Assembly (NCBI RefSeq): GCF_001194135.2
Contig: NC_069008.1
Location: 657,867 to 708,134 of the forward strand
Reading direction: 5' to 3'
DNA from: Octopus bimaculoides
Taxonomy: Eukaryota
DNA length: 50,268 nucleotides
The translations under genes were made by a program, and so were the position numbers. This document shows positions 8,370 to 48,400 of the stretch, one piece after another. The notes below the pieces were generated by a model, which was not told the DNA's origin, made no database searches, and was given only the letters and a program-made list of their open reading frames with translations. Positions within the stretch are counted from its first letter, which is position 1; every line of letters starts with the position of its first letter.

Positions 8370-9990
8370 CAGGTTGATGGAATCACGTTGCCCAGGTAGG
8401 TTTCCGTTGGTGGTGTCTTCAAAGGATTCTTGATTCACACAAATTTGCGTCCCTCCTGGTCCACCTTGGTTTTCTTGGAGGGGGTTCTTAAATCTGCATT
8501 TGTTGCCTCCTCATACACTCTGGTCATCATTTGTTGGACTATGAAAGGGGCACAATGTCATTGGTATAGACCAGGTTTGTTAGGTGTCTACCCACAGTCC
8601 ACTGCATTCTTGCAAACAGCCCGTTTCTGGCTCACCACAAGACAAAGCCTAAAACTAGAAGAAACAGCAGAGATGACAGGAGACAACCTTGTCTCACTCC
8701 TGTGATGATGATGATGATGGCGAATTCTGTTCCCTCTTTCAGTTCTCACACTGCAGCTTGAGTTGGTTGGTATACAGACCCTTAAGGAAGGAGGTATAGC
8801 AAATGCCTTGCCAATGCAGCCCAGCATTTCTCTTGTAAAGGTTTTTTTTTAAATTGATTCAATGACCAGTGGTGGCTGGAATTCTATGCATTTCTTGACA
8901 GTTTTGCAGTACAAAGATCTGTCTGATGCATGGTCTTCCAGCCTGGAATCCTGCTTGCTCTTCTTTGAATTGTTCATCCAGTGCTTCCTTCAAACATTGT
9001 AGCAGGACAGCAGAAGACGCTGCCGGACGCCAACATCAAAAGGTGAAGTTGCTGGAGTTGTTGAGTTTACCTTTCTTTGACAGCTACGACACTCGTTATC
9101 TACTCTTCTGGTTCTGCTCTGTTTTCCCAACAGGTGTTACACAATTTGGTTAGCTCTTGTATCTTGGCAGCATTTCCTCCATCCATTCTTTAGTAGTTCA
9201 TTTTGGAGATATAATCCAATCCTGGGGTTTCAAATGTCAGAGCCTGGATGACTTCATCTCCACCAATAGGTACTGTAATGTCACCTGGTTAGCTTCTGCA
9301 ATGGTACCAGATGATTCAAGCTCTTTCAGAGCTCCTCCATTTTTTTTGTCTTTCACCAACTCTGGACCATTCAAATCTTGCACTTCATGATAAGTGTCCT
9401 CCTGGTGGCATTTCTATTTGCTCTTTCCTCGCCTTCACCTATCTTCCTTTCCTATCCATGTCTTCTTATCTCTCCTGCAGCCTTTTTCTTTCCAATACTT
9501 CAGCAACTTTCCAGTTTTTTGTGACCATTTGACAACCTTGTTTAATTTTTACCCAATCTTTTCTCCTCCTCATTTCTTTCTTCTCATCAATAAATTTCCA
9601 AGTTTTAGCTCTCATCCATCTTTCCCTTTCACTGCCTCATTTACTTCTGATGACAATTGTTTGGCACTAAACCACTTTTTGAAAAACGCTCCATTGTTCC
9701 TCCAGACTGTTCATTCCTTGAAAGAACATAGTTAAATCTTTTCTTAACCTTTCTTGTGGTCACTCTTAAACCATCATCCCTGTAAATTCCTCCTTTTTTT
9801 AGAAGTTCCTTTTGCCTGTTGAAGTTTGTATTGGGGCCCTCTTTCACTCTTTCTACTGCAAATGGTCAATCTACTTCTTTCTTTCTTACCTTTTCTCCAG
9901 TTTCATTTGCAGTCCAAACAAGATGATGGTCTGATTGTACATCTGCATCTTTTACAGCAAGGCTTGCTAACCTTCGACCTCCTTCCATTG
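8370..9990 (-). mobile_element. Degenerate RTE-clade LINE ORF2 (end of APE endonuclease plus reverse transcriptase), frameshifted
   Basis: Minus-strand fragments DADVQSDHHLV (APE SDH motif), DEVIQAL..PGLD, LDEQFKEEQAGFQAGRPCIRQIFVL, GVRQGCLLSSLLFLLVL, LTNLVYTNDIV (decayed YADD) and YLGNVI. Confidence 0.85.
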
Positions 9991-46300: not shown

Positions 46301-47921
46301 AAACCTCGTCCTTCTCAAAGAACTTTACCTCAACGATAACAGCATGAATCATTTTGACCAAAATGTATTCCATGGTTTACGATCTTTAAGGCACCTTGAT
46401 CTTAGCGGTAACAAGTTCCATGTGATCGAGGCACATACTCTGATTGAGTTCAGCCATATTAGAACCTTAGAGTCAATCCAGCTGGAGCAAAATCCATGGC
46501 AGTGTGCATGCGGCAATCAACAGTTCTACCATTGGCTTAATTACAATTACACTATTGTGCGTAACAGGAGAGACATACGATGTAACCACAAGATCATTGT
46601 TGATCAACGTCCGTCTGCATTTAAGTGTCAGCCGTCCTTAACCAGGAAAATCATTGTGATTGGCCTCATAATGTCTGTGATTATATTGGCATTTTGTTTA
46701 GCTTTCTTCATAAGATATCGCCGTGAATGTGTGGCCTGCATCTATGTGAAACTGGGGTTGCAGTGTTGTCGGTACCGAGATCGGTCGTACAAACCATTTG
46801 ATATCTTCCTCGTTTATGATCGTCGAGATGAAGACTGCCGCAAATGGATTGAGTCGACCTTACTACCCAGGCTTGAGTACAGTGGGAAGCATGCTTTCAA
46901 GATTTTCTATCCAGACCGCAACGCCATCACCATCATCAGAGGTAGATCTAGGGTCAGAAACGCTGCTCCAACGCCTTCCCGCAGCGTTTGCACCACCACC
47001 GCCGCCGCTGACTCCATTGCTGACAACACCACCACCGCCAAGGAGAGCAACTACAGTAATGACACAAGCAATGCCACTGTTTCCACAGGTGCCACCGCCG
47101 CCACCACCTCCAACAACACAGACCTTCCTACAGCCATCAACACCACTAACGCTGCCACAATTACTACTATGAATTACAACAACAACAATAATAACAACCA
47201 CGCGGCCACCGCCACCACCACAATTGCTTCCACAGCCACCAGCTGCACAGGCAGCCTCGTTGCTGCCATCAGCCAGTGTCGCTGCACAATGGTTATAGTG
47301 TCTCGCGGCACTGGCTCCAGCCCGTCATGCATGGCGGCACTAAGGGTCGCCGTTGCTCTCTCTAAGGGCCGGCTTTTGATGGGTGTGGGTGGAAGCAGTG
47401 GAGGTGTGTACGATGGTGATGATGACGACGACGGCAGTCATGGGAACAGGTTTGCAGGAGAGCGGGGGAGAGGAGAGCAAGGAGACGTCGACGAGGAGGG
47501 AGGAGGGGTAGGTCACCACCGACACCAGCATCCCCTACAACAACAACAACGTCATTATCATCATCACAGCCTCCAACCTCAACAGCATCATCACAATCGT
47601 TATCATCGTCATCATGACCCCAACCCCCACTATCGCCATCATCATCACCATCGTCATCACCATCAACAACAGCATCGGGTTGTGTTGGTTTTTTTCGGTG
47701 ACGTGGATATCTCGACGTTGGATGATGAGATCAAACGCCGGGTGCAGCACCGGGAGTATCTGACTGCTCGGGGCCGTTGCTTCTGGCACAGGCTGCAATA
47801 CGAACTGCCGAAGCCGGGTCCCTGCCGTGGACAAGAGCTCAACGAACACGAGGCATCAGTGGACGAGGAGACGGCTATCATACAGAACTCTGTCCTGGCT
47901 GAGTATACCTCATGTATGTAA
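43335..47921 (+). CDS. Toll-like receptor, multiple-cysteine-cluster (long Toll-type) architecture, single coding exon, ~1510-1530 aa
   Basis: In-frame TAG at 43305 bounds the ORF. ATG at 43335, or CACCATG at 43395 giving signal peptide MSVASYVLLITFALIGISHA. About 23 LxxLxLxxN repeats, LRRCT GNPIVCSCD, LRRNT CSSKCDC, about 6 more LRRs, LRRCT QNPWQCAC, TM IIVIGLIMSVIILAFCLAFFI (~46650-46712), then TIR box 1 FDIFLVY (46797), AISQCRCTMVIVS and box 3 FWHRLQYELP. A likely acceptor TTTCCAG (AG 43231-43232) implies an upstream non-coding exon. Confidence 0.93.
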   Translation: MVSTPTISHTTIATPASTNTMSVASYVLLITFALIGISHAQEQRNRSFPFQLSGAARTVLSFHYQPASECLYDINANVSICASDQPFTTSTTSATPQGQPSPSNISYIYIHCRNNPTRFSPHRSKCLCKFGNPIFPVLNNAHISDGPLELTPTVNNEQKSNTRSLDVSDMDIDGGSRIGLAASSRPHLQNGHQSEPWVNKNQQHESRSQTVPKKNFEFLPSHKPQDSSPVQPKNFIFCQVTDLTSISLHHLKSLTAVDLGSNSVRAVPSKFFVGLVNLKYISLSNNPIDILPDGVFCGLKNLTYLDLSNLHLSGYPSVAFLCHRVSPPIRYIDVSHNSIETLSTEALTTLASSLIFLNLSSNAINHIHSSAFQNSRVLRTLDLSFNRLSELPARLCQGLAALRHLYISSNRIFVLHALPLINCTRLLHLDLSSNIINHIPQHLNLSSLQLLNLSTNDLKSLTPSMFSAFPLLKQLDLSQNKIKLIEKNSFSSFPALRSLNLSRNRLEDGLNFNVIFQHLGSLTVLDLSSNVITSLGNNSFAHLLNLEHLDLSHNFLSFFNRLVFRKLSRLKELNLRANMISLLSRGAFEDLVDLQILDLSENDLVTIENEAFPQCPFTLDLSRNSLQVVPAGLKNTSIRHLDMRWNYIRKLHFQAFHDMGRLERLQVGHNRIEEAIPGAFSSLSNLKTLSLDHNKLNIDFEENIFQGLETLASINLAYNNIHRLNDIFRYPALQRVQYLNISHNPIKSIGDYLFPPTYPVRGAIRKLSLDSCNITEIIPFAFNNLENLTAISLRDNFLTRFKPFVVMSSGLSVLLHGNPIVCSCDMRWLKEQQQQQQQKRSFAMEKLSESTYHVRECTFEHSPDWKPILMTSIDEFLCVSKIECSSKCDCFAGKEAGSPLRTLCSRRLTTLPDVIASSTVQLYLDGNDFSSLGQLTSLSERKRMQTQELYLNSSQISSIGEDFLKRFPELRVLRLNKNSMLTLPAFVFGNLVLLKELYLNDNSMNHFDQNVFHGLRSLRHLDLSGNKFHVIEAHTLIEFSHIRTLESIQLEQNPWQCACGNQQFYHWLNYNYTIVRNRRDIRCNHKIIVDQRPSAFKCQPSLTRKIIVIGLIMSVIILAFCLAFFIRYRRECVACIYVKLGLQCCRYRDRSYKPFDIFLVYDRRDEDCRKWIESTLLPRLEYSGKHAFKIFYPDRNAITIIRGRSRVRNAAPTPSRSVCTTTAAADSIADNTTTAKESNYSNDTSNATVSTGATAATTSNNTDLPTAINTTNAATITTMNYNNNNNNNHAATATTTIASTATSCTGSLVAAISQCRCTMVIVSRGTGSSPSCMAALRVAVALSKGRLLMGVGGSSGGVYDGDDDDDGSHGNRFAGERGRGEQGDVDEEGGGVGHHRHQHPLQQQQRHYHHHSLQPQQHHHNRYHRHHDPNPHYRHHHHHRHHHQQQHRVVLVFFGDVDISTLDDEIKRRVQHREYLTARGRCFWHRLQYELPKPGPCRGQELNEHEASVDEETAIIQNSVLAEYTSCM

Positions 47922-47929
47922 GATAGAAG

Positions 47930-48400
47930 AACAGTACTATGGAGTAGAGGTTAACTTGGGTGATTTAGAGGAGATCGAGTCGAGCAGAGATTGAGTGGAG
48001 TAGAAGGGCTGGTGGAGTGTAGGGGTGGGAGATGTGTGGTGTATTGGAGTTTGGGTGGAGTGGAAGTGTGGTAGTAAAGTGGAGTGGACTGTGAGTGTAG
48101 GTAAAGTAGAGTGAGAGAGCGGGTAAAGTGGAATGTAGTACAAGTAAAAAGGAGTGGAGTGTATAAAGTGAAGTGGAGTGTGTGTAAAGTGAAGTACAGT
48201 GAATGTGTCAGTAAAGTGGAGTGAGAGTTTGAGTAGAGTGGAGTGGAGCGTGAGTGAAGTGAAATGGAGTGGAACCGATCACTGCAGCAGAATGTTGTCG
48301 AGTGGAGTAGGAGTCTGCACTTGAAATAGTGGAACAGGGATGGAGTGTGGGAACATGCCTTTGGAGTGAAGTAGGTTGGAGTGGAGTGTGGTTGTAGAGC
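47930..48400 (+). repeat. (GGAGT/GAAGT)-rich degenerate pentamer tract immediately after the TLR stop codon
   Basis: GTGGAGTGGAGT and GTGAAGT motifs dominate ~470 nt. Confidence 0.8.

What the first reader, a model, noticed from the sequence alone, without database searches (positions are those of the whole stretch)
46791..47820. Toll-like receptor whose TIR domain is split by two ~100-aa in-frame low-complexity inserts and lacks the BB-loop Pro and the alphaC Trp/Glu
Seen in sequence: TIR elements occur in order (FDIFLVY, WIESTLLPRLE, FKIFYPDRN, SLVAAISQCRCTMVIVS, SPSCMAAL, RVVLVFF, YLT, FWHRLQYELP) but span ~345 codons instead of ~140. Insert 1 (~46944-47249) is a Thr/Ala/Asn tract of ACC/AAC repeats placed in the BB loop, where RDxxPG is replaced by RNAITIIRG. 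Insert 2 (~47382-47675) is Gly/Asp-rich, then His/Gln-rich. Neither insert breaks the frame. Established: the BB-loop proline is needed for MyD88/TIRAP recruitment (TLR4 P712H), and the alphaC WCxxE glutamate is catalytic in NADase TIRs; here it reads SCMAAL. Inference: this may be a non-canonical Toll (decoy, adhesion/developmental, or using disordered His/Gln tracts as a new interaction surface) rather than a MyD88-signalling receptor.
Basis: partly seen in the sequence, partly recalled or inferred. Interest (0 to 1): 0.72.

Follow-up and report, generated by a model that had tools for sequence, protein, structure and literature searches.

The report
Octopus Toll receptor with split TIR
An octopus immune-type (Toll) receptor gene has two roughly 100-residue floppy, repetitive stretches inserted into loops of its otherwise intact signalling (TIR) domain; they look translated and are found only in octopuses, which is an unusual variant of a known receptor family, not a new kind of system.

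Summary
The window holds one intronless 1537-codon ORF (43308..47921, +). It encodes a multiple-cysteine-cluster Toll with a signal peptide, many LRRs, two Cys clusters, a TM segment and a cytoplasmic tail.

The tail is a TIR domain cut into three pieces by two low-complexity inserts: 46944-47252 (Thr/Ala/Asn) and 47382-47675 (Gly/Asp, then His/Gln). With the inserts, Pfam TIR is below threshold. Without them it passes, and AlphaFold folds the three pieces as one TIR with both inserts disordered.

The inserts are probably translated, not spliced out. O. vulgaris has both at the same sites. All indels are multiples of 3. dN/dS is 0.46 and 0.18, against 0.10 for the TIR core. No in-frame GT..AG pair is conserved. 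RNA evidence is lacking.

The O. sinensis model is frameshifted by a 4-nt gap in a (GCC)n run, probably an assembly error or a very recent change.

The missing Box 2 is not octopus-specific. It is shared by a pan-mollusc Toll clade whose other members, including cuttlefish, have compact tails. The alphaC Trp and Glu vary across that clade; cuttlefish keeps the Trp, octopus has Ser and Ala.

So only the inserts are new. Their function and the adaptor used are unknown. Interest is moderate.

The parts
43308..47921 (+). Single open reading frame of 1537 codons (first ATG at 43335; signal-peptide-like MSVASYVLLITFALIGISHA from 43395). It encodes the whole Toll receptor, and its stop is TAA at 47919-47921.
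   Evidence: ORF list. P0075, 1528 aa, is 100% identical and is the window's own annotated protein. LRR_8 at E 3e-98.
44050..46640 (+). LRR ectodomain of the multiple-cysteine-cluster (mcc, 'P-type') kind. It has a first LRRCT (GNPIVCSC, 45783), a poly-Gln run (~45834-45854), an LRRNT-like Cys cluster (CSSKCDCF) and a second LRRCT (NPWQCAC, 46491).
   Evidence: dN/dS is 0.14 against O. vulgaris.
46650..46715 (+). Transmembrane segment (IIVIGLIMSVIILAFCLAFFI).
   Evidence: Read directly from the sequence. It aligns with the TM segments of the mollusc orthologues.
46788..46943 (+). TIR core piece A: betaA (Box 1, FDIFLVY), alphaA, betaB (FKIFY) and a degenerate Box 2 (PDRNAITIIRG).
   Evidence: pLDDT 84-96. 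169 bits against the family profile. dN/dS 0.04.
46944..47252 (+). Insert 1: 103 codons rich in Thr/Ala/Asn (ACC/GCC/AAC-type codons) inside the BB loop. It is predicted to be disordered.
   Evidence: pLDDT 30-50. It is 110 codons in O. vulgaris, 81% identical, and its five indels are all multiples of 3. dN/dS 0.46, p=0.04 against neutral.
47253..47381 (+). TIR core piece B: the end of alphaB, betaC (CTMVIVS) and alphaC (SPSCMAALRVAVALSK), with Ser and Ala in place of the usual Trp and Glu.
   Evidence: pLDDT 90-97, alignment, 44 bits.
47382..47675 (+). Insert 2: 98 codons in the CD loop (alphaC to betaD). A Gly/Asp/Glu-rich half is followed by a His/Gln/Arg-rich half (24 His in 56 residues). 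It is predicted to be disordered.
   Evidence: pLDDT 44-56. It is 108 codons in O. vulgaris, 86% identical, with indels of 18 and 12 nt. dN/dS 0.18, p=3e-5 against neutral.
47676..47816 (+). TIR core piece C: betaD (RVVLVFF), alphaD, the clade-specific motif REYLTARGRCFW (it contains Box 3, FW) and alphaE (HRLQYELP).
   Evidence: pLDDT 93-97, 133 bits, dN/dS 0.05.
47817..47918 (+). Acidic C-terminal tail (…EHEASVDEETAIIQNSVLAEYTSCM). It corresponds to a clade-wide motif, D-VSE-x-D-[VI]-I-[IL]-[YF].
   Evidence: Alignment A3. There are 0 non-synonymous and 4 synonymous changes in 34 codons against O. vulgaris.

Best explanation
This is a functional, single-exon, mcc-type Toll receptor gene of an Octopus species. 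The species is probably O. bimaculoides; that is an inference from 93% identity to O. sinensis/vulgaris and from the gappy scaffold.

Its cytoplasmic TIR domain belongs to an old, mollusc-wide clade that keeps Box 1, Box 3 and the TIR fold but lost the canonical Box 2 (BB-loop) motif.

In the octopus lineage, after the split from cuttlefish and before the split of this species from O. vulgaris, slippage-type expansion of trinucleotide-rich sequence enlarged two surface loops into disordered tracts of about 100 residues. The BB loop grew from about 18 to 120 residues and the CD loop from about 5 to 103.

These tracts are part of the mRNA and are translated. The three core pieces still assemble into one TIR fold, with the inserts looping out.

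Shown: the coordinates, the frame, the restriction to Octopus, purifying selection on the core, coding-type constraint on the inserts, and a confident TIR model for the core.

Inferred:
- A 100-residue disordered tract sits in the loop that canonical TIRs use for head-to-tail assembly, and the whole clade lacks Box 2. The receptor therefore most likely signals, or is regulated, through another surface. The candidates are the strongly conserved alphaD/betaE/alphaE motif (…YLTARGRCFWHRLQYELP) and the acidic C-terminal motif.
- The inserts are mostly tolerated loop expansions kept as flexible linkers.
- Insert 2, an acidic half followed by a His/Arg-rich half under tighter constraint, is the better candidate for an acquired modulatory role.
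For: Gene and domains: (LRR_8 at 3e-98).

TIR identity:
- Pfam TIR scores 18.3 bits for the native tail and 36.5 bits for the insert-deleted tail.
- The family profile hits solved TLR15/2/1/6/10 TIRs at E 1e-24 to 1e-20.
- AlphaFold with a 25-row alignment gives 113 residues at pLDDT >=90 in betaA-alphaA-betaB / alphaB-betaC-alphaC / betaD-alphaD-betaE-alphaE order, with both inserts below about 50.
- The top Foldseek matches are all TIRs (IL-18Rbeta, TM 0.68 normalised to the target, probability 0.99).

Translated, not spliced:
- O. vulgaris CAI9742777 keeps both inserts in frame at the same sites.
- 9 of 9 CDS indels are multiples of 3 (7 lie in the inserts), against 5 of 20 in the flanks.
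- The inserts are 81% and 86% identical in amino acids, with dN/dS 0.46 and 0.18 and an excess of synonymous changes (p=0.04 and 3e-5).
- Every in-frame GT..AG pair that could excise an insert in the window loses its AG or GT in O. vulgaris and O. sinensis.

Not a pseudogene: TIR core dN/dS is 0.10 (p=1.5e-7), the ectodomain 0.14, and the C-tail has 0 non-synonymous changes.

Lineage: of 24 other tails aligned, none has an insert. Twenty of them are mollusc clade members, including the cuttlefish cluster P0197 (1205 aa, Logan contig of 4.2 kb, Pfam TIR hit). Box 2 is absent from the whole clade.
Against: - No transcript or peptide evidence was available. Retention of the inserts in mRNA rests on comparative sequence and on three annotations that may simply have followed the long ORF.
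- Trinucleotide-repeat DNA tends to change length in units of 3 even without selection. Low-complexity sequence also keeps several frames open (insert 1 has 0-1 stops in 4 of 6 frames). The indel and open-frame arguments are therefore weaker than they look.
- Constraint on insert 1 is only marginal (p=0.04).
- The annotated O. sinensis proteins are frameshifted inside insert 1 and lack most of the TIR. If that frameshift is real, the TIR can be lost.
- In the window, insert 1 is bounded by G|GTAGAT … CACAG|G, a usable-looking 309-nt in-frame splice pair.
- The Foldseek E-values are weak (0.04).
- TIR core piece B has dN/dS 0.69, but that rests on only 6 changes.
Confidence: 0.72

Rival explanations
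1. The inserts are cryptic introns or 'exitrons'. They lie inside the genomic ORF but are removed from most mature mRNA, so the protein made has a compact TIR of ordinary length.
For: In the window, insert 1 is flanked by GAG|GTAGAT (GT at 46942) and CACAG|GC (AG at 47250). That makes 309 nt, in frame, and removing it joins …IIRG to SLVAAIS exactly where the compact orthologues align. Insert 2 has GT at 47385/47406 and AG at 47672, also in frame. The insert-deleted tail is what passes Pfam TIR. The two O. sinensis RefSeq isoforms differ by 30 nt inside insert 1, so something variable is seen there.
Against: None of these pairs is conserved. The acceptor AG is CG (insert 1) or GG (insert 2) in O. 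vulgaris and O. sinensis, and the alternative donor at 46953 is GC there. The donor lacks the +5 G, and the tract before the acceptor is not pyrimidine-rich. All 7 insert indels are multiples of 3. dN/dS is 0.46 and 0.18, and non-repetitive stretches such as KESNY.NDTSNATV and GVGGSSGGVYDGDDDDDGSHG are conserved. Three independent annotations keep the inserts in the CDS.
Confidence: 0.1
2. The cytoplasmic tail is decaying. The TIR is a relic being broken up by repeat expansion, and the protein works, if at all, as a TIR-independent LRR adhesion or decoy molecule.
For: The native tail fails the Pfam TIR threshold. Box 2 and the alphaC Trp/Glu are lost. The O. sinensis models are frameshifted in insert 1 and end inside alphaC. 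O. vulgaris has an annotated TIR-less isoform (P0194). Core piece B has dN/dS 0.69.
Against: TIR core dN/dS is 0.10, with a highly significant excess of synonymous changes. Pieces A and C are at 0.04-0.05 and the C-tail has no amino-acid change. The frame is open to the same stop in all three species once the single 4-nt (GCC)n gap is set aside. O. sinensis differs from O. vulgaris at only 6 of 4649 aligned bases, so the frameshift is either very recent or an assembly error. The core folds at pLDDT above 90. The tail has been conserved across mollusc classes.
Confidence: 0.06
3. The inserts are acquired functional modules and not passive loops. For example, the acidic-then-His/Arg-rich insert 2 could act as a pH- or metal-dependent switch or a multivalent interaction tract that controls TIR clustering. 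The Thr/Ser/Asn-rich insert 1 could be a phosphorylation or O-GlcNAc substrate that masks the BB surface.
For: Insert 2 has dN/dS 0.18, close to the ectodomain's 0.14, and its non-repetitive acidic half is nearly identical between species. The two halves carry opposite charge character. Both inserts lie at loops on the TIR surface. Both have persisted since before the split of this species from O. vulgaris (dS about 0.2).
Against: There is no direct evidence. The length varies by 7-10 residues between close species. No Pfam match was found in the inserts. The composition is typical of slippage-generated tracts, and the same gene shows similar in-frame slippage elsewhere (poly-Gln in the ectodomain). 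Constraint on insert 1 is weak.
Confidence: 0.12

Closest known systems
Mollusc clade of about 1200-aa mcc Toll receptors with a Box 2-less TIR. Examples: Acanthosepion (Sepia) pharaonis cluster P0197, Mytilus californianus XP_052084445 ('slit homolog 1-like'), Mizuhopecten XP_021359091, Pinctada KAK3094725, Potamilus P0077, Haliotis asinina 'Tollo' P0078, Patella 'TLR6', Liolophura 'Tollo'.
   Same: The architecture and ectodomain are the same, at 28-30% identity over more than 80% of the length. The tail shares Box 1, a degenerate BB loop, the YITARSRxxWxRLxYELP motif and an acidic C-terminal motif. The octopus gene is the orthologue of these proteins.
   Different: All other members have compact tails, with a BB segment of 15-22 residues and a CD segment of 4-6 residues. 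Only Octopus has the two inserts of about 100 residues. Octopus has also lost the alphaC Trp, which cuttlefish, Mytilus, scallop and chiton keep.
Canonical protostome mcc Tolls of the Toll-6/-7/Tollo type (the arthropod hits P0200, P0208, P0216, P0220 and the many 'Tollo'/'Toll-7' hits).
   Same: An mcc LRR ectodomain, a TM segment and a TIR. These are the best non-mollusc matches for both the ectodomain and the tail.
   Different: They keep Box 2 as RDW/FxxG and the alphaC SxW…EF motif, have no internal inserts, and pass Pfam TIR easily.
SIGIRR/TIR8 and IL-1RAcPb: receptor-family TIRs with altered signalling surfaces that act as non-signalling or inhibitory receptors (from established knowledge; PMC9213720 for IL-1RAcPb).
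   Same: A receptor TIR whose fold is retained while canonical interface residues are replaced. SIGIRR TIR is among the sequence and fold matches.
   Different: There is no orthology. Those proteins have point changes and a C-terminal extension, not 100-residue inserts inside the domain. An inhibitory role for the octopus protein has not been tested.
Vertebrate TLR1/2/6/10/15 TIR domains (solved structures 7YLF, 1FYW, 1FYV, 4OM7, 2J67).
   Same: They are the best solved-structure relatives of the clade profile (E 1e-24 to 1e-20). Their BB loop motif, H-x-R-D-F-x-x-G, also lacks a conserved Pro (PMC7075850).
   Different: They keep the R-D…G of Box 2 and the alphaC Trp, are compact, and carry scc ectodomains.

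Membership tests
TIR domain (Pfam PF01582 / PF13676) | Scores above the curated Pfam threshold | tested here: inconclusive
   The native tail scores 18.3 bits, below the 21.3 cut-off. The tail with both inserts removed scores 36.5 bits (E 5e-9). 22 of 25 aligned tails match TIR at E<=0.01.
TIR domain (Pfam PF01582 / PF13676) | Flavodoxin-like alternating beta/alpha fold (betaA-alphaA … betaE-alphaE) | tested here: met
   The AlphaFold model puts the elements in the expected order, with 113 residues at pLDDT >=90. The top Foldseek PDB matches are TIR domains (TM 0.62-0.68 normalised to the target), though E is only 0.04 because of the disordered loops.
TIR domain (Pfam PF01582 / PF13676) | Box 1 ((F/Y)D(A/V)F(I/V)SY-like) | tested here: met
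   The sequence reads PFDIFLVYD at 46794-46820. The Asp is invariant in A3.
TIR domain (Pfam PF01582 / PF13676) | Box 2 / BB loop, RDxxPG | tested here: not met
   The sequence reads PDRNAITIIRG followed by the 103-residue insert 1. The motif is absent from the whole mollusc clade.
TIR domain (Pfam PF01582 / PF13676) | Box 3 (FW) | tested here: met
   The sequence reads GRCFWHRL at 47772-47795. The Trp is nearly invariant in the alignment.
NADase-type TIR (SARM1, plant and bacterial TIRs) | Conserved catalytic Glu in the alphaC region | tested here: not met
   The canonical …W..(E)F… column is Ala in octopus (SCMAALRVA). The importance of this Glu is taken from PMC7075850. NADase activity is therefore not expected, but it is not expected of receptor TIRs in general either.
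mcc ('P-type') Toll-like receptor | Signal peptide, LRR array with more than one Cys-cluster cap, a single TM segment and a cytoplasmic TIR | tested here: met
   LRR_8 at 3e-98 with 13 matched stretches. LRRCT motifs at 45783 and 46491, with an LRRNT-like CSSKCDCF between them. TM at 46650-46715. TIR as above.
Mollusc Box 2-less mcc Toll clade | Full-length similarity plus the clade motifs (YITARSRxxWxRLxYELP and the acidic C-terminal VSE-D-II motif) | tested here: met
   Potamilus and Haliotis match at E 3e-143 and 1e-129 over 83% of the query. The octopus tail reads EYLTARGRCFWHRLQYELP and SVDEETAIIQ. The clade profile gives 343 bits in total. No tree was built.
MyD88-dependent signalling receptor | Ligand-induced recruitment of MyD88 or another TIR adaptor and NF-kB activation | not testable with these tools
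   This needs co-IP or reporter assays. Sequence alone does not decide it: canonical Tolls aligned here also lack the BB-loop Pro.
Spliceosomal intron / exitron (for the inserts) | Conserved GT…AG boundaries; no coding constraint (free indel lengths, dN/dS near 1) | tested here: not met
   The boundaries are not conserved in O. vulgaris or O. sinensis. 7 of 7 insert indels are multiples of 3. dN/dS is 0.46 and 0.18. Direct RNA evidence is not available.
Processed or decaying pseudogene | Frameshifts or stops and relaxed selection (dN/dS near 1) | tested here: not met
   The frame is open in the window and in O. vulgaris. dN/dS is 0.10 (TIR core) and 0.14 (ectodomain). The only frame break is a 4-nt gap in an O. 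sinensis (GCC)n run.

The most novel reading that the evidence does not exclude
The two octopus-specific disordered tracts turn a TIR domain into a regulated assembly module. Insert 1 would occupy the BB-loop surface as a removable or modifiable mask rich in Thr, Ser and Asn. Insert 2 is an acidic block followed by a 43%-His block; it would act as a pH- or Zn-sensitive, self-interacting or multivalent switch that controls clustering of the receptor tails. That would be a way of gating TIR signalling not described for any Toll or TLR.
Probability: 0.1. Interest if true: 0.75.

Novelty: new variant of a known kind. Interest (0 to 1): 0.4.

Why it matters
TIR domains are compact signalling modules of about 140 residues, and their BB loop is the classic contact for receptor-adaptor assembly. 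A TIR that tolerates, and keeps under selection, a 100-residue disordered tract in that very loop, plus a second one in the CD loop, is a natural experiment. It shows which TIR surfaces can be dispensed with, and it points to the alphaD-alphaE face and the C-terminal motif as the working surface of this mollusc clade.

There is also a practical point. The inserts push the domain below the Pfam TIR threshold. Relatives in other molluscs are annotated as 'slit homolog', 'Tollo', 'TLR6' or 'TLR7'. HMM-filtered TLR censuses could therefore miss this receptor. One such census reports that cephalopods have the smallest TLR repertoires and lack single-TIR mccTLRs (PMC10279657). Whether this clade corresponds to that subfamily was not established here.

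The O. sinensis RefSeq models for this gene are probably truncated by an indel in a GCC repeat.

Tried and rejected
1. The first homologue search used the native C-terminal 712 aa. It returned only distant LRR/Toll hits and missed even the window's own protein, because the His/Gln/Thr/Asn words filled the 8000-candidate limit. Repeating it with the inserts removed worked.

2. The third homologue search, with the tail alignment A1, returned nothing, not even its own source proteins. As a result I could not look for transcript-derived octopus fragments or for other octopod orthologues.

It was rerun as A2.

4. Single-sequence AlphaFold of the native tail was useless (pLDDT 35). The alignment-based run was used instead.

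5. Cryptic-intron idea: I noticed G|GTAGAT…CACAG|G around insert 1 and took it seriously. It was rejected as the main explanation because neither it nor any other in-frame pair is conserved, and because the inserts evolve like coding sequence.

6. Pseudogene idea, prompted by the frameshifted O. sinensis models: rejected for the window gene.

7. I considered that loss of the BB-loop Pro argues against MyD88 use. I dropped it as an argument because canonical Tolls in the same alignment lack the Pro.

8. A Pfam scan of two small ORFs upstream of the gene found nothing meaningful. The literature searches found no description of inserts inside a TIR or of this clade.
Full report
**What is there.** The window contains one long open reading frame, 43308..47921 on the + strand (1537 codons, first ATG at 43335). 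Nothing else in the 50 kb looks like a gene. The rest is rich in microsatellites and has many N gaps.

The product has a signal-peptide-like start and a large LRR array (Pfam LRR_8 at E 3e-98, 13 stretches). It also has two cysteine-cluster caps (GNPIVCSC at 45783, NPWQCAC at 46491, with a CSSKCDCF cluster between them), one hydrophobic TM segment (46650-46715) and a 420-residue cytoplasmic tail. That is the architecture of a multiple-cysteine-cluster (mcc, 'P-type') Toll.

The protein collection holds the same protein as a 1528-aa entry (P0075, 100% identical). The nearest relatives are O. sinensis and O. vulgaris proteins at 93% identity. The window is therefore from another Octopus species, probably O. 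bimaculoides (inference).

**Check of the observation.** From Box 1 (FDIFLVY, 46797) to Box 3/alphaE (FWHRLQYELP, ending 47810) is 338 codons.

- Insert 1 is codons 1213-1315 (46944-47252): 103 residues, 26% Thr, 18% Ala, 17% Asn.
- Insert 2 is codons 1359-1456 (47382-47675): 98 residues, a Gly/Asp/Glu-rich half followed by a half that is 43% His and 20% Gln.

The native tail is below the Pfam TIR threshold (18.3 against 21.3 bits). With both inserts removed it passes (36.5 bits, E 5e-9). A profile built from compact mollusc tails hits the three core pieces in order at 169, 44 and 133 bits.

**Is it a TIR fold?** Single-sequence AlphaFold failed (pLDDT 35). With a 25-row family alignment (A3) the native 383-residue tail gave 113 residues at pLDDT >=90. 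The elements came in the order betaA, alphaA, betaB | alphaB, betaC, alphaC | betaD, alphaD, betaE, alphaE, and both inserts scored below about 50.

The best Foldseek matches in the PDB are all TIR domains (IL-18Rbeta, SIGIRR, RUN1, Hydra TRR-2). TM-scores normalised to the target are 0.62-0.68, but E-values are weak (0.04) because two-thirds of the query is disordered loop. The clade profile matches solved TLR15/2/1/6/10 TIRs at E 1e-24 to 1e-20.

**Are the inserts translated, or are they cryptic introns?** I noticed that insert 1 in the window is bounded by GAG|GTAGAT (GT at 46942) and CACAG|GC (AG at 47250). That is 309 nt, in frame, and removing it would join the core pieces exactly where the compact orthologues align. 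Insert 2 also has in-frame GT…AG pairs. I tested this against orthologous DNA from O. vulgaris (L002) and O. sinensis (L001).

1. In both other species each such pair loses a dinucleotide. The insert 1 acceptors become CG or fall in a deletion, the alternative donor becomes GC, and the insert 2 acceptor becomes GG.
2. All nine indels between the window and O. vulgaris in the CDS are multiples of 3 (18, 15, 12, 30, 3, 18, 12, 3 and 21 nt), and seven lie in the inserts. In 1.4 kb of flanking non-coding alignment only 5 of 20 indels are multiples of 3.
3. The inserts are 81% and 86% identical at the amino-acid level. Conserved non-repetitive stretches include KESNY.NDTSNATV, TTSNNTDLP and GVGGSSGGVYDGDDDDDGSHG.
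4. Nei-Gojobori dN/dS is 0.46 for insert 1 (excess of synonymous changes, p=0.04) and 0.18 for insert 2 (p=3e-5). The TIR core is at 0.10 and the ectodomain at 0.14.

There are caveats. Trinucleotide-rich DNA slips in units of 3 anyway, low-complexity sequence keeps several frames open, and no RNA or peptide data could be consulted. I put the probability that the inserts are mostly translated at about 0.85.

**Is the gene decaying?** The annotated O. sinensis proteins (XP_036355783 and XP_036355784) follow the window up to …RSVCT. They then read insert 1 in the +1 frame (Pro-rich) and stop inside alphaC.

The DNA alignment shows a single cause: a 4-nt gap in a (GCC)n run at the equivalent of about 46995. 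Downstream, the original frame is open to the same stop (ORF 9672..10649 in L001). O. sinensis differs from O. vulgaris at only 6 of 4649 aligned bases. This is either an assembly indel in a repeat or a very recent event, and it says nothing about long-term constraint.

Between the window species and O. vulgaris (dS about 0.15-0.2), TIR pieces A and C have dN/dS 0.04-0.05. The 34-codon C-tail has four synonymous and no non-synonymous changes. Piece B is at 0.69, but on six changes only. The tail is under purifying selection.

**Where the peculiarities come from.** An exhaustive profile search with insert-free tails (A2) found 24 representatives at E<=1e-30. Cluster look-ups identify them as proteins of about 1200 aa from the following groups:

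- cuttlefish (the Acanthosepion pharaonis cluster, P0197, 1205 aa);
- bivalves (Mytilus, Pinctada, Mizuhopecten, Potamilus);
- gastropods (Haliotis, Patella, Babylonia);
- a chiton (Liolophura).

They are annotated variously as 'slit homolog', 'Tollo', 'TLR6' or 'TIR domain-containing'. The cuttlefish protein comes from Logan contigs of 4.1-4.5 kb, a size consistent with transcripts, and it has a Pfam TIR hit.

In alignment A3, none of the 20 non-octopus clade members and none of four canonical Toll TIRs has an insertion at either site. The betaB-to-betaC segment is 15-22 residues (120 in octopus). The alphaC-to-betaD segment is 4-6 residues (103 in octopus).

Box 2 (RDW/FxxG in the canonical sequences) is missing from the entire mollusc clade. 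The alphaC Trp is present in cuttlefish, Mytilus, scallop and chiton, is Phe or Tyr in others, and is Ser in octopus. The alphaC Glu is present in some members and absent in others.

The clade has its own strongly conserved motifs: …GDYITARSRxxWxRLxYELP (octopus REYLTARGRCFWHRLQYELP) and an acidic C-terminal D-VSE-x-D-[VI]I[IL][YF] motif (octopus SVDEETAIIQ).

So the loss of Box 2 is old and clade-wide. The two large inserts, and the alphaC Trp-to-Ser change, are the derived octopus state. They arose after the split from cuttlefish and before the split of this species from O. vulgaris. Short S/T/N/A-rich and His-containing sequences at the same loop positions in cuttlefish (…RRLSIASNSTE…, …KEPSHK…) look like the seeds of the expansions (inference).

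**How it most likely works.**

Shown: an intact, selected receptor gene; a TIR core that models confidently; and two disordered loop expansions that evolve as coding sequence.

Inferred:
- In canonical TIR assemblies the BB loop is a principal contact (PMC7075850 and established knowledge, for example TLR4 P712H). This clade has no Box 2, and octopus can place 103 disordered residues in that loop. The working interface of this receptor is therefore probably elsewhere, most plausibly the conserved alphaD-betaE-alphaE face and the C-terminal acidic motif.
- The inserts themselves are most simply explained as slippage-generated loop expansions, tolerated because those loops are not used.
- Insert 2 has an acidic block followed by a His/Arg block and shows tighter constraint. 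It is the better candidate for an acquired modulatory role, but nothing here tests that.

'Non-canonical Toll' is reasonable, but two of its arguments are weak.

- The BB-loop Pro is also Val or Ala in canonical Tolls in the same alignment (RDWLAG, RDWKAG, RDFAVG). It is not conserved in TLR1/2/6/10-type TIRs either (PMC7075850).
- The alphaC Glu is catalytic in NADase TIRs (PMC7075850) and is not a known requirement of receptor TIRs.

Whether MyD88 is recruited cannot be decided from sequence.

**Comparison and novelty.** The gene is a member of the mcc Toll family and of a mollusc Box 2-less clade. I found no description of large inserts inside a TIR, or of this clade, in the papers searched.

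One census states that single-TIR mccTLRs are absent from cephalopods (PMC10279657), and censuses of this type select TLRs by TIR-HMM hits (PMC8609888). The native octopus tail is below the Pfam threshold, so this gene may be a false negative of such surveys. I did not establish that this clade is the subfamily meant there.

I rate the finding as a new variant of a known kind. It is of moderate interest (0.4). The anatomy is genuinely unusual and evolutionarily well supported, but it is confined to one lineage, has no functional evidence, and the mundane explanation (tolerated low-complexity loop expansion) is the most likely one.

Noticed in passing
window 46701-46712 (…TTCTTCATAAGA…); L002 ~9403-9414 and 24665; L001 ~9388-9399: O. 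vulgaris has an annotated TIR-less isoform (CAI9742778, 971 aa, ending …AFFVTRY*). It uses a donor TTC|GTAAGA at the end of the TM segment, which is also present in O. sinensis, and an acceptor about 15 kb downstream (TTCATAG|GTGACCAGATATTGA). The window reads ATAAGA (Ile for Val), so it has no GT donor and this tail-less isoform is not available in the window species.
   Followed up: partly
L001 (O. sinensis VCDQ01005924.1), equivalent of window ~46995: The RefSeq models XP_036355783 and XP_036355784 are truncated by a 4-nt gap in a (GCC)n run. They read insert 1 in the +1 frame (Pro-rich) and stop in alphaC. Downstream, the true frame is intact and differs from O. vulgaris by a single substitution. 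This is a likely assembly or annotation error. The two isoforms differ by 30 nt inside the repeat.
   Followed up: partly
window ~45834-45854: A poly-Gln run between the first LRRCT and the LRRNT-like cluster of the ectodomain is 5 codons longer in O. vulgaris and O. sinensis. There is also an 18-nt in-frame indel at about 43850 in the N-terminal region. This is the same kind of in-frame slippage as in the tail inserts, so the gene is generally prone to it.
   Followed up: partly
window 47817-47918, and alignment A3 C-terminal columns: A clade-wide acidic motif follows the TIR (D-VSE-x-D-[VI]I[IL][YF]; octopus and cuttlefish read EHEA.(V/M)(D/E)E(E/D)TAII.NSV). It has 0 non-synonymous and 4 synonymous changes against O. 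vulgaris. It looks like a conserved short linear interaction motif of unknown partner.
   Followed up: no
window 47960-48400: The 3' flank consists of degenerate tandem repeats (periods 21 and 70, unit about GTAAAGTGGAGTG) with an extreme excess of G over C (GC skew up to +0.9). The first 700 nt of the flank are 89% identical to O. vulgaris, so this is probably a conserved 3'UTR.
   Followed up: partly
clade members P0198, P0201, P0078, P0209, P0353: Orthologues in other molluscs carry inconsistent names ('slit homolog 1/2-like', 'Tollo', 'TLR6', 'TLR7'). Together with the sub-threshold Pfam TIR score of the native octopus tail, this suggests the clade is under-counted in TLR censuses. PMC10279657 reports single-TIR mccTLRs as absent from cephalopods.
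   Followed up: partly
window 1-43300: No other convincing gene was found. There are many N gaps (18 runs of 10-744 nt) and microsatellite-derived pseudo-ORFs (TA/CA repeats). Two small ORFs just upstream (41926-42273 and 42713-43030, minus strand) gave no meaningful Pfam match.
   Followed up: partly
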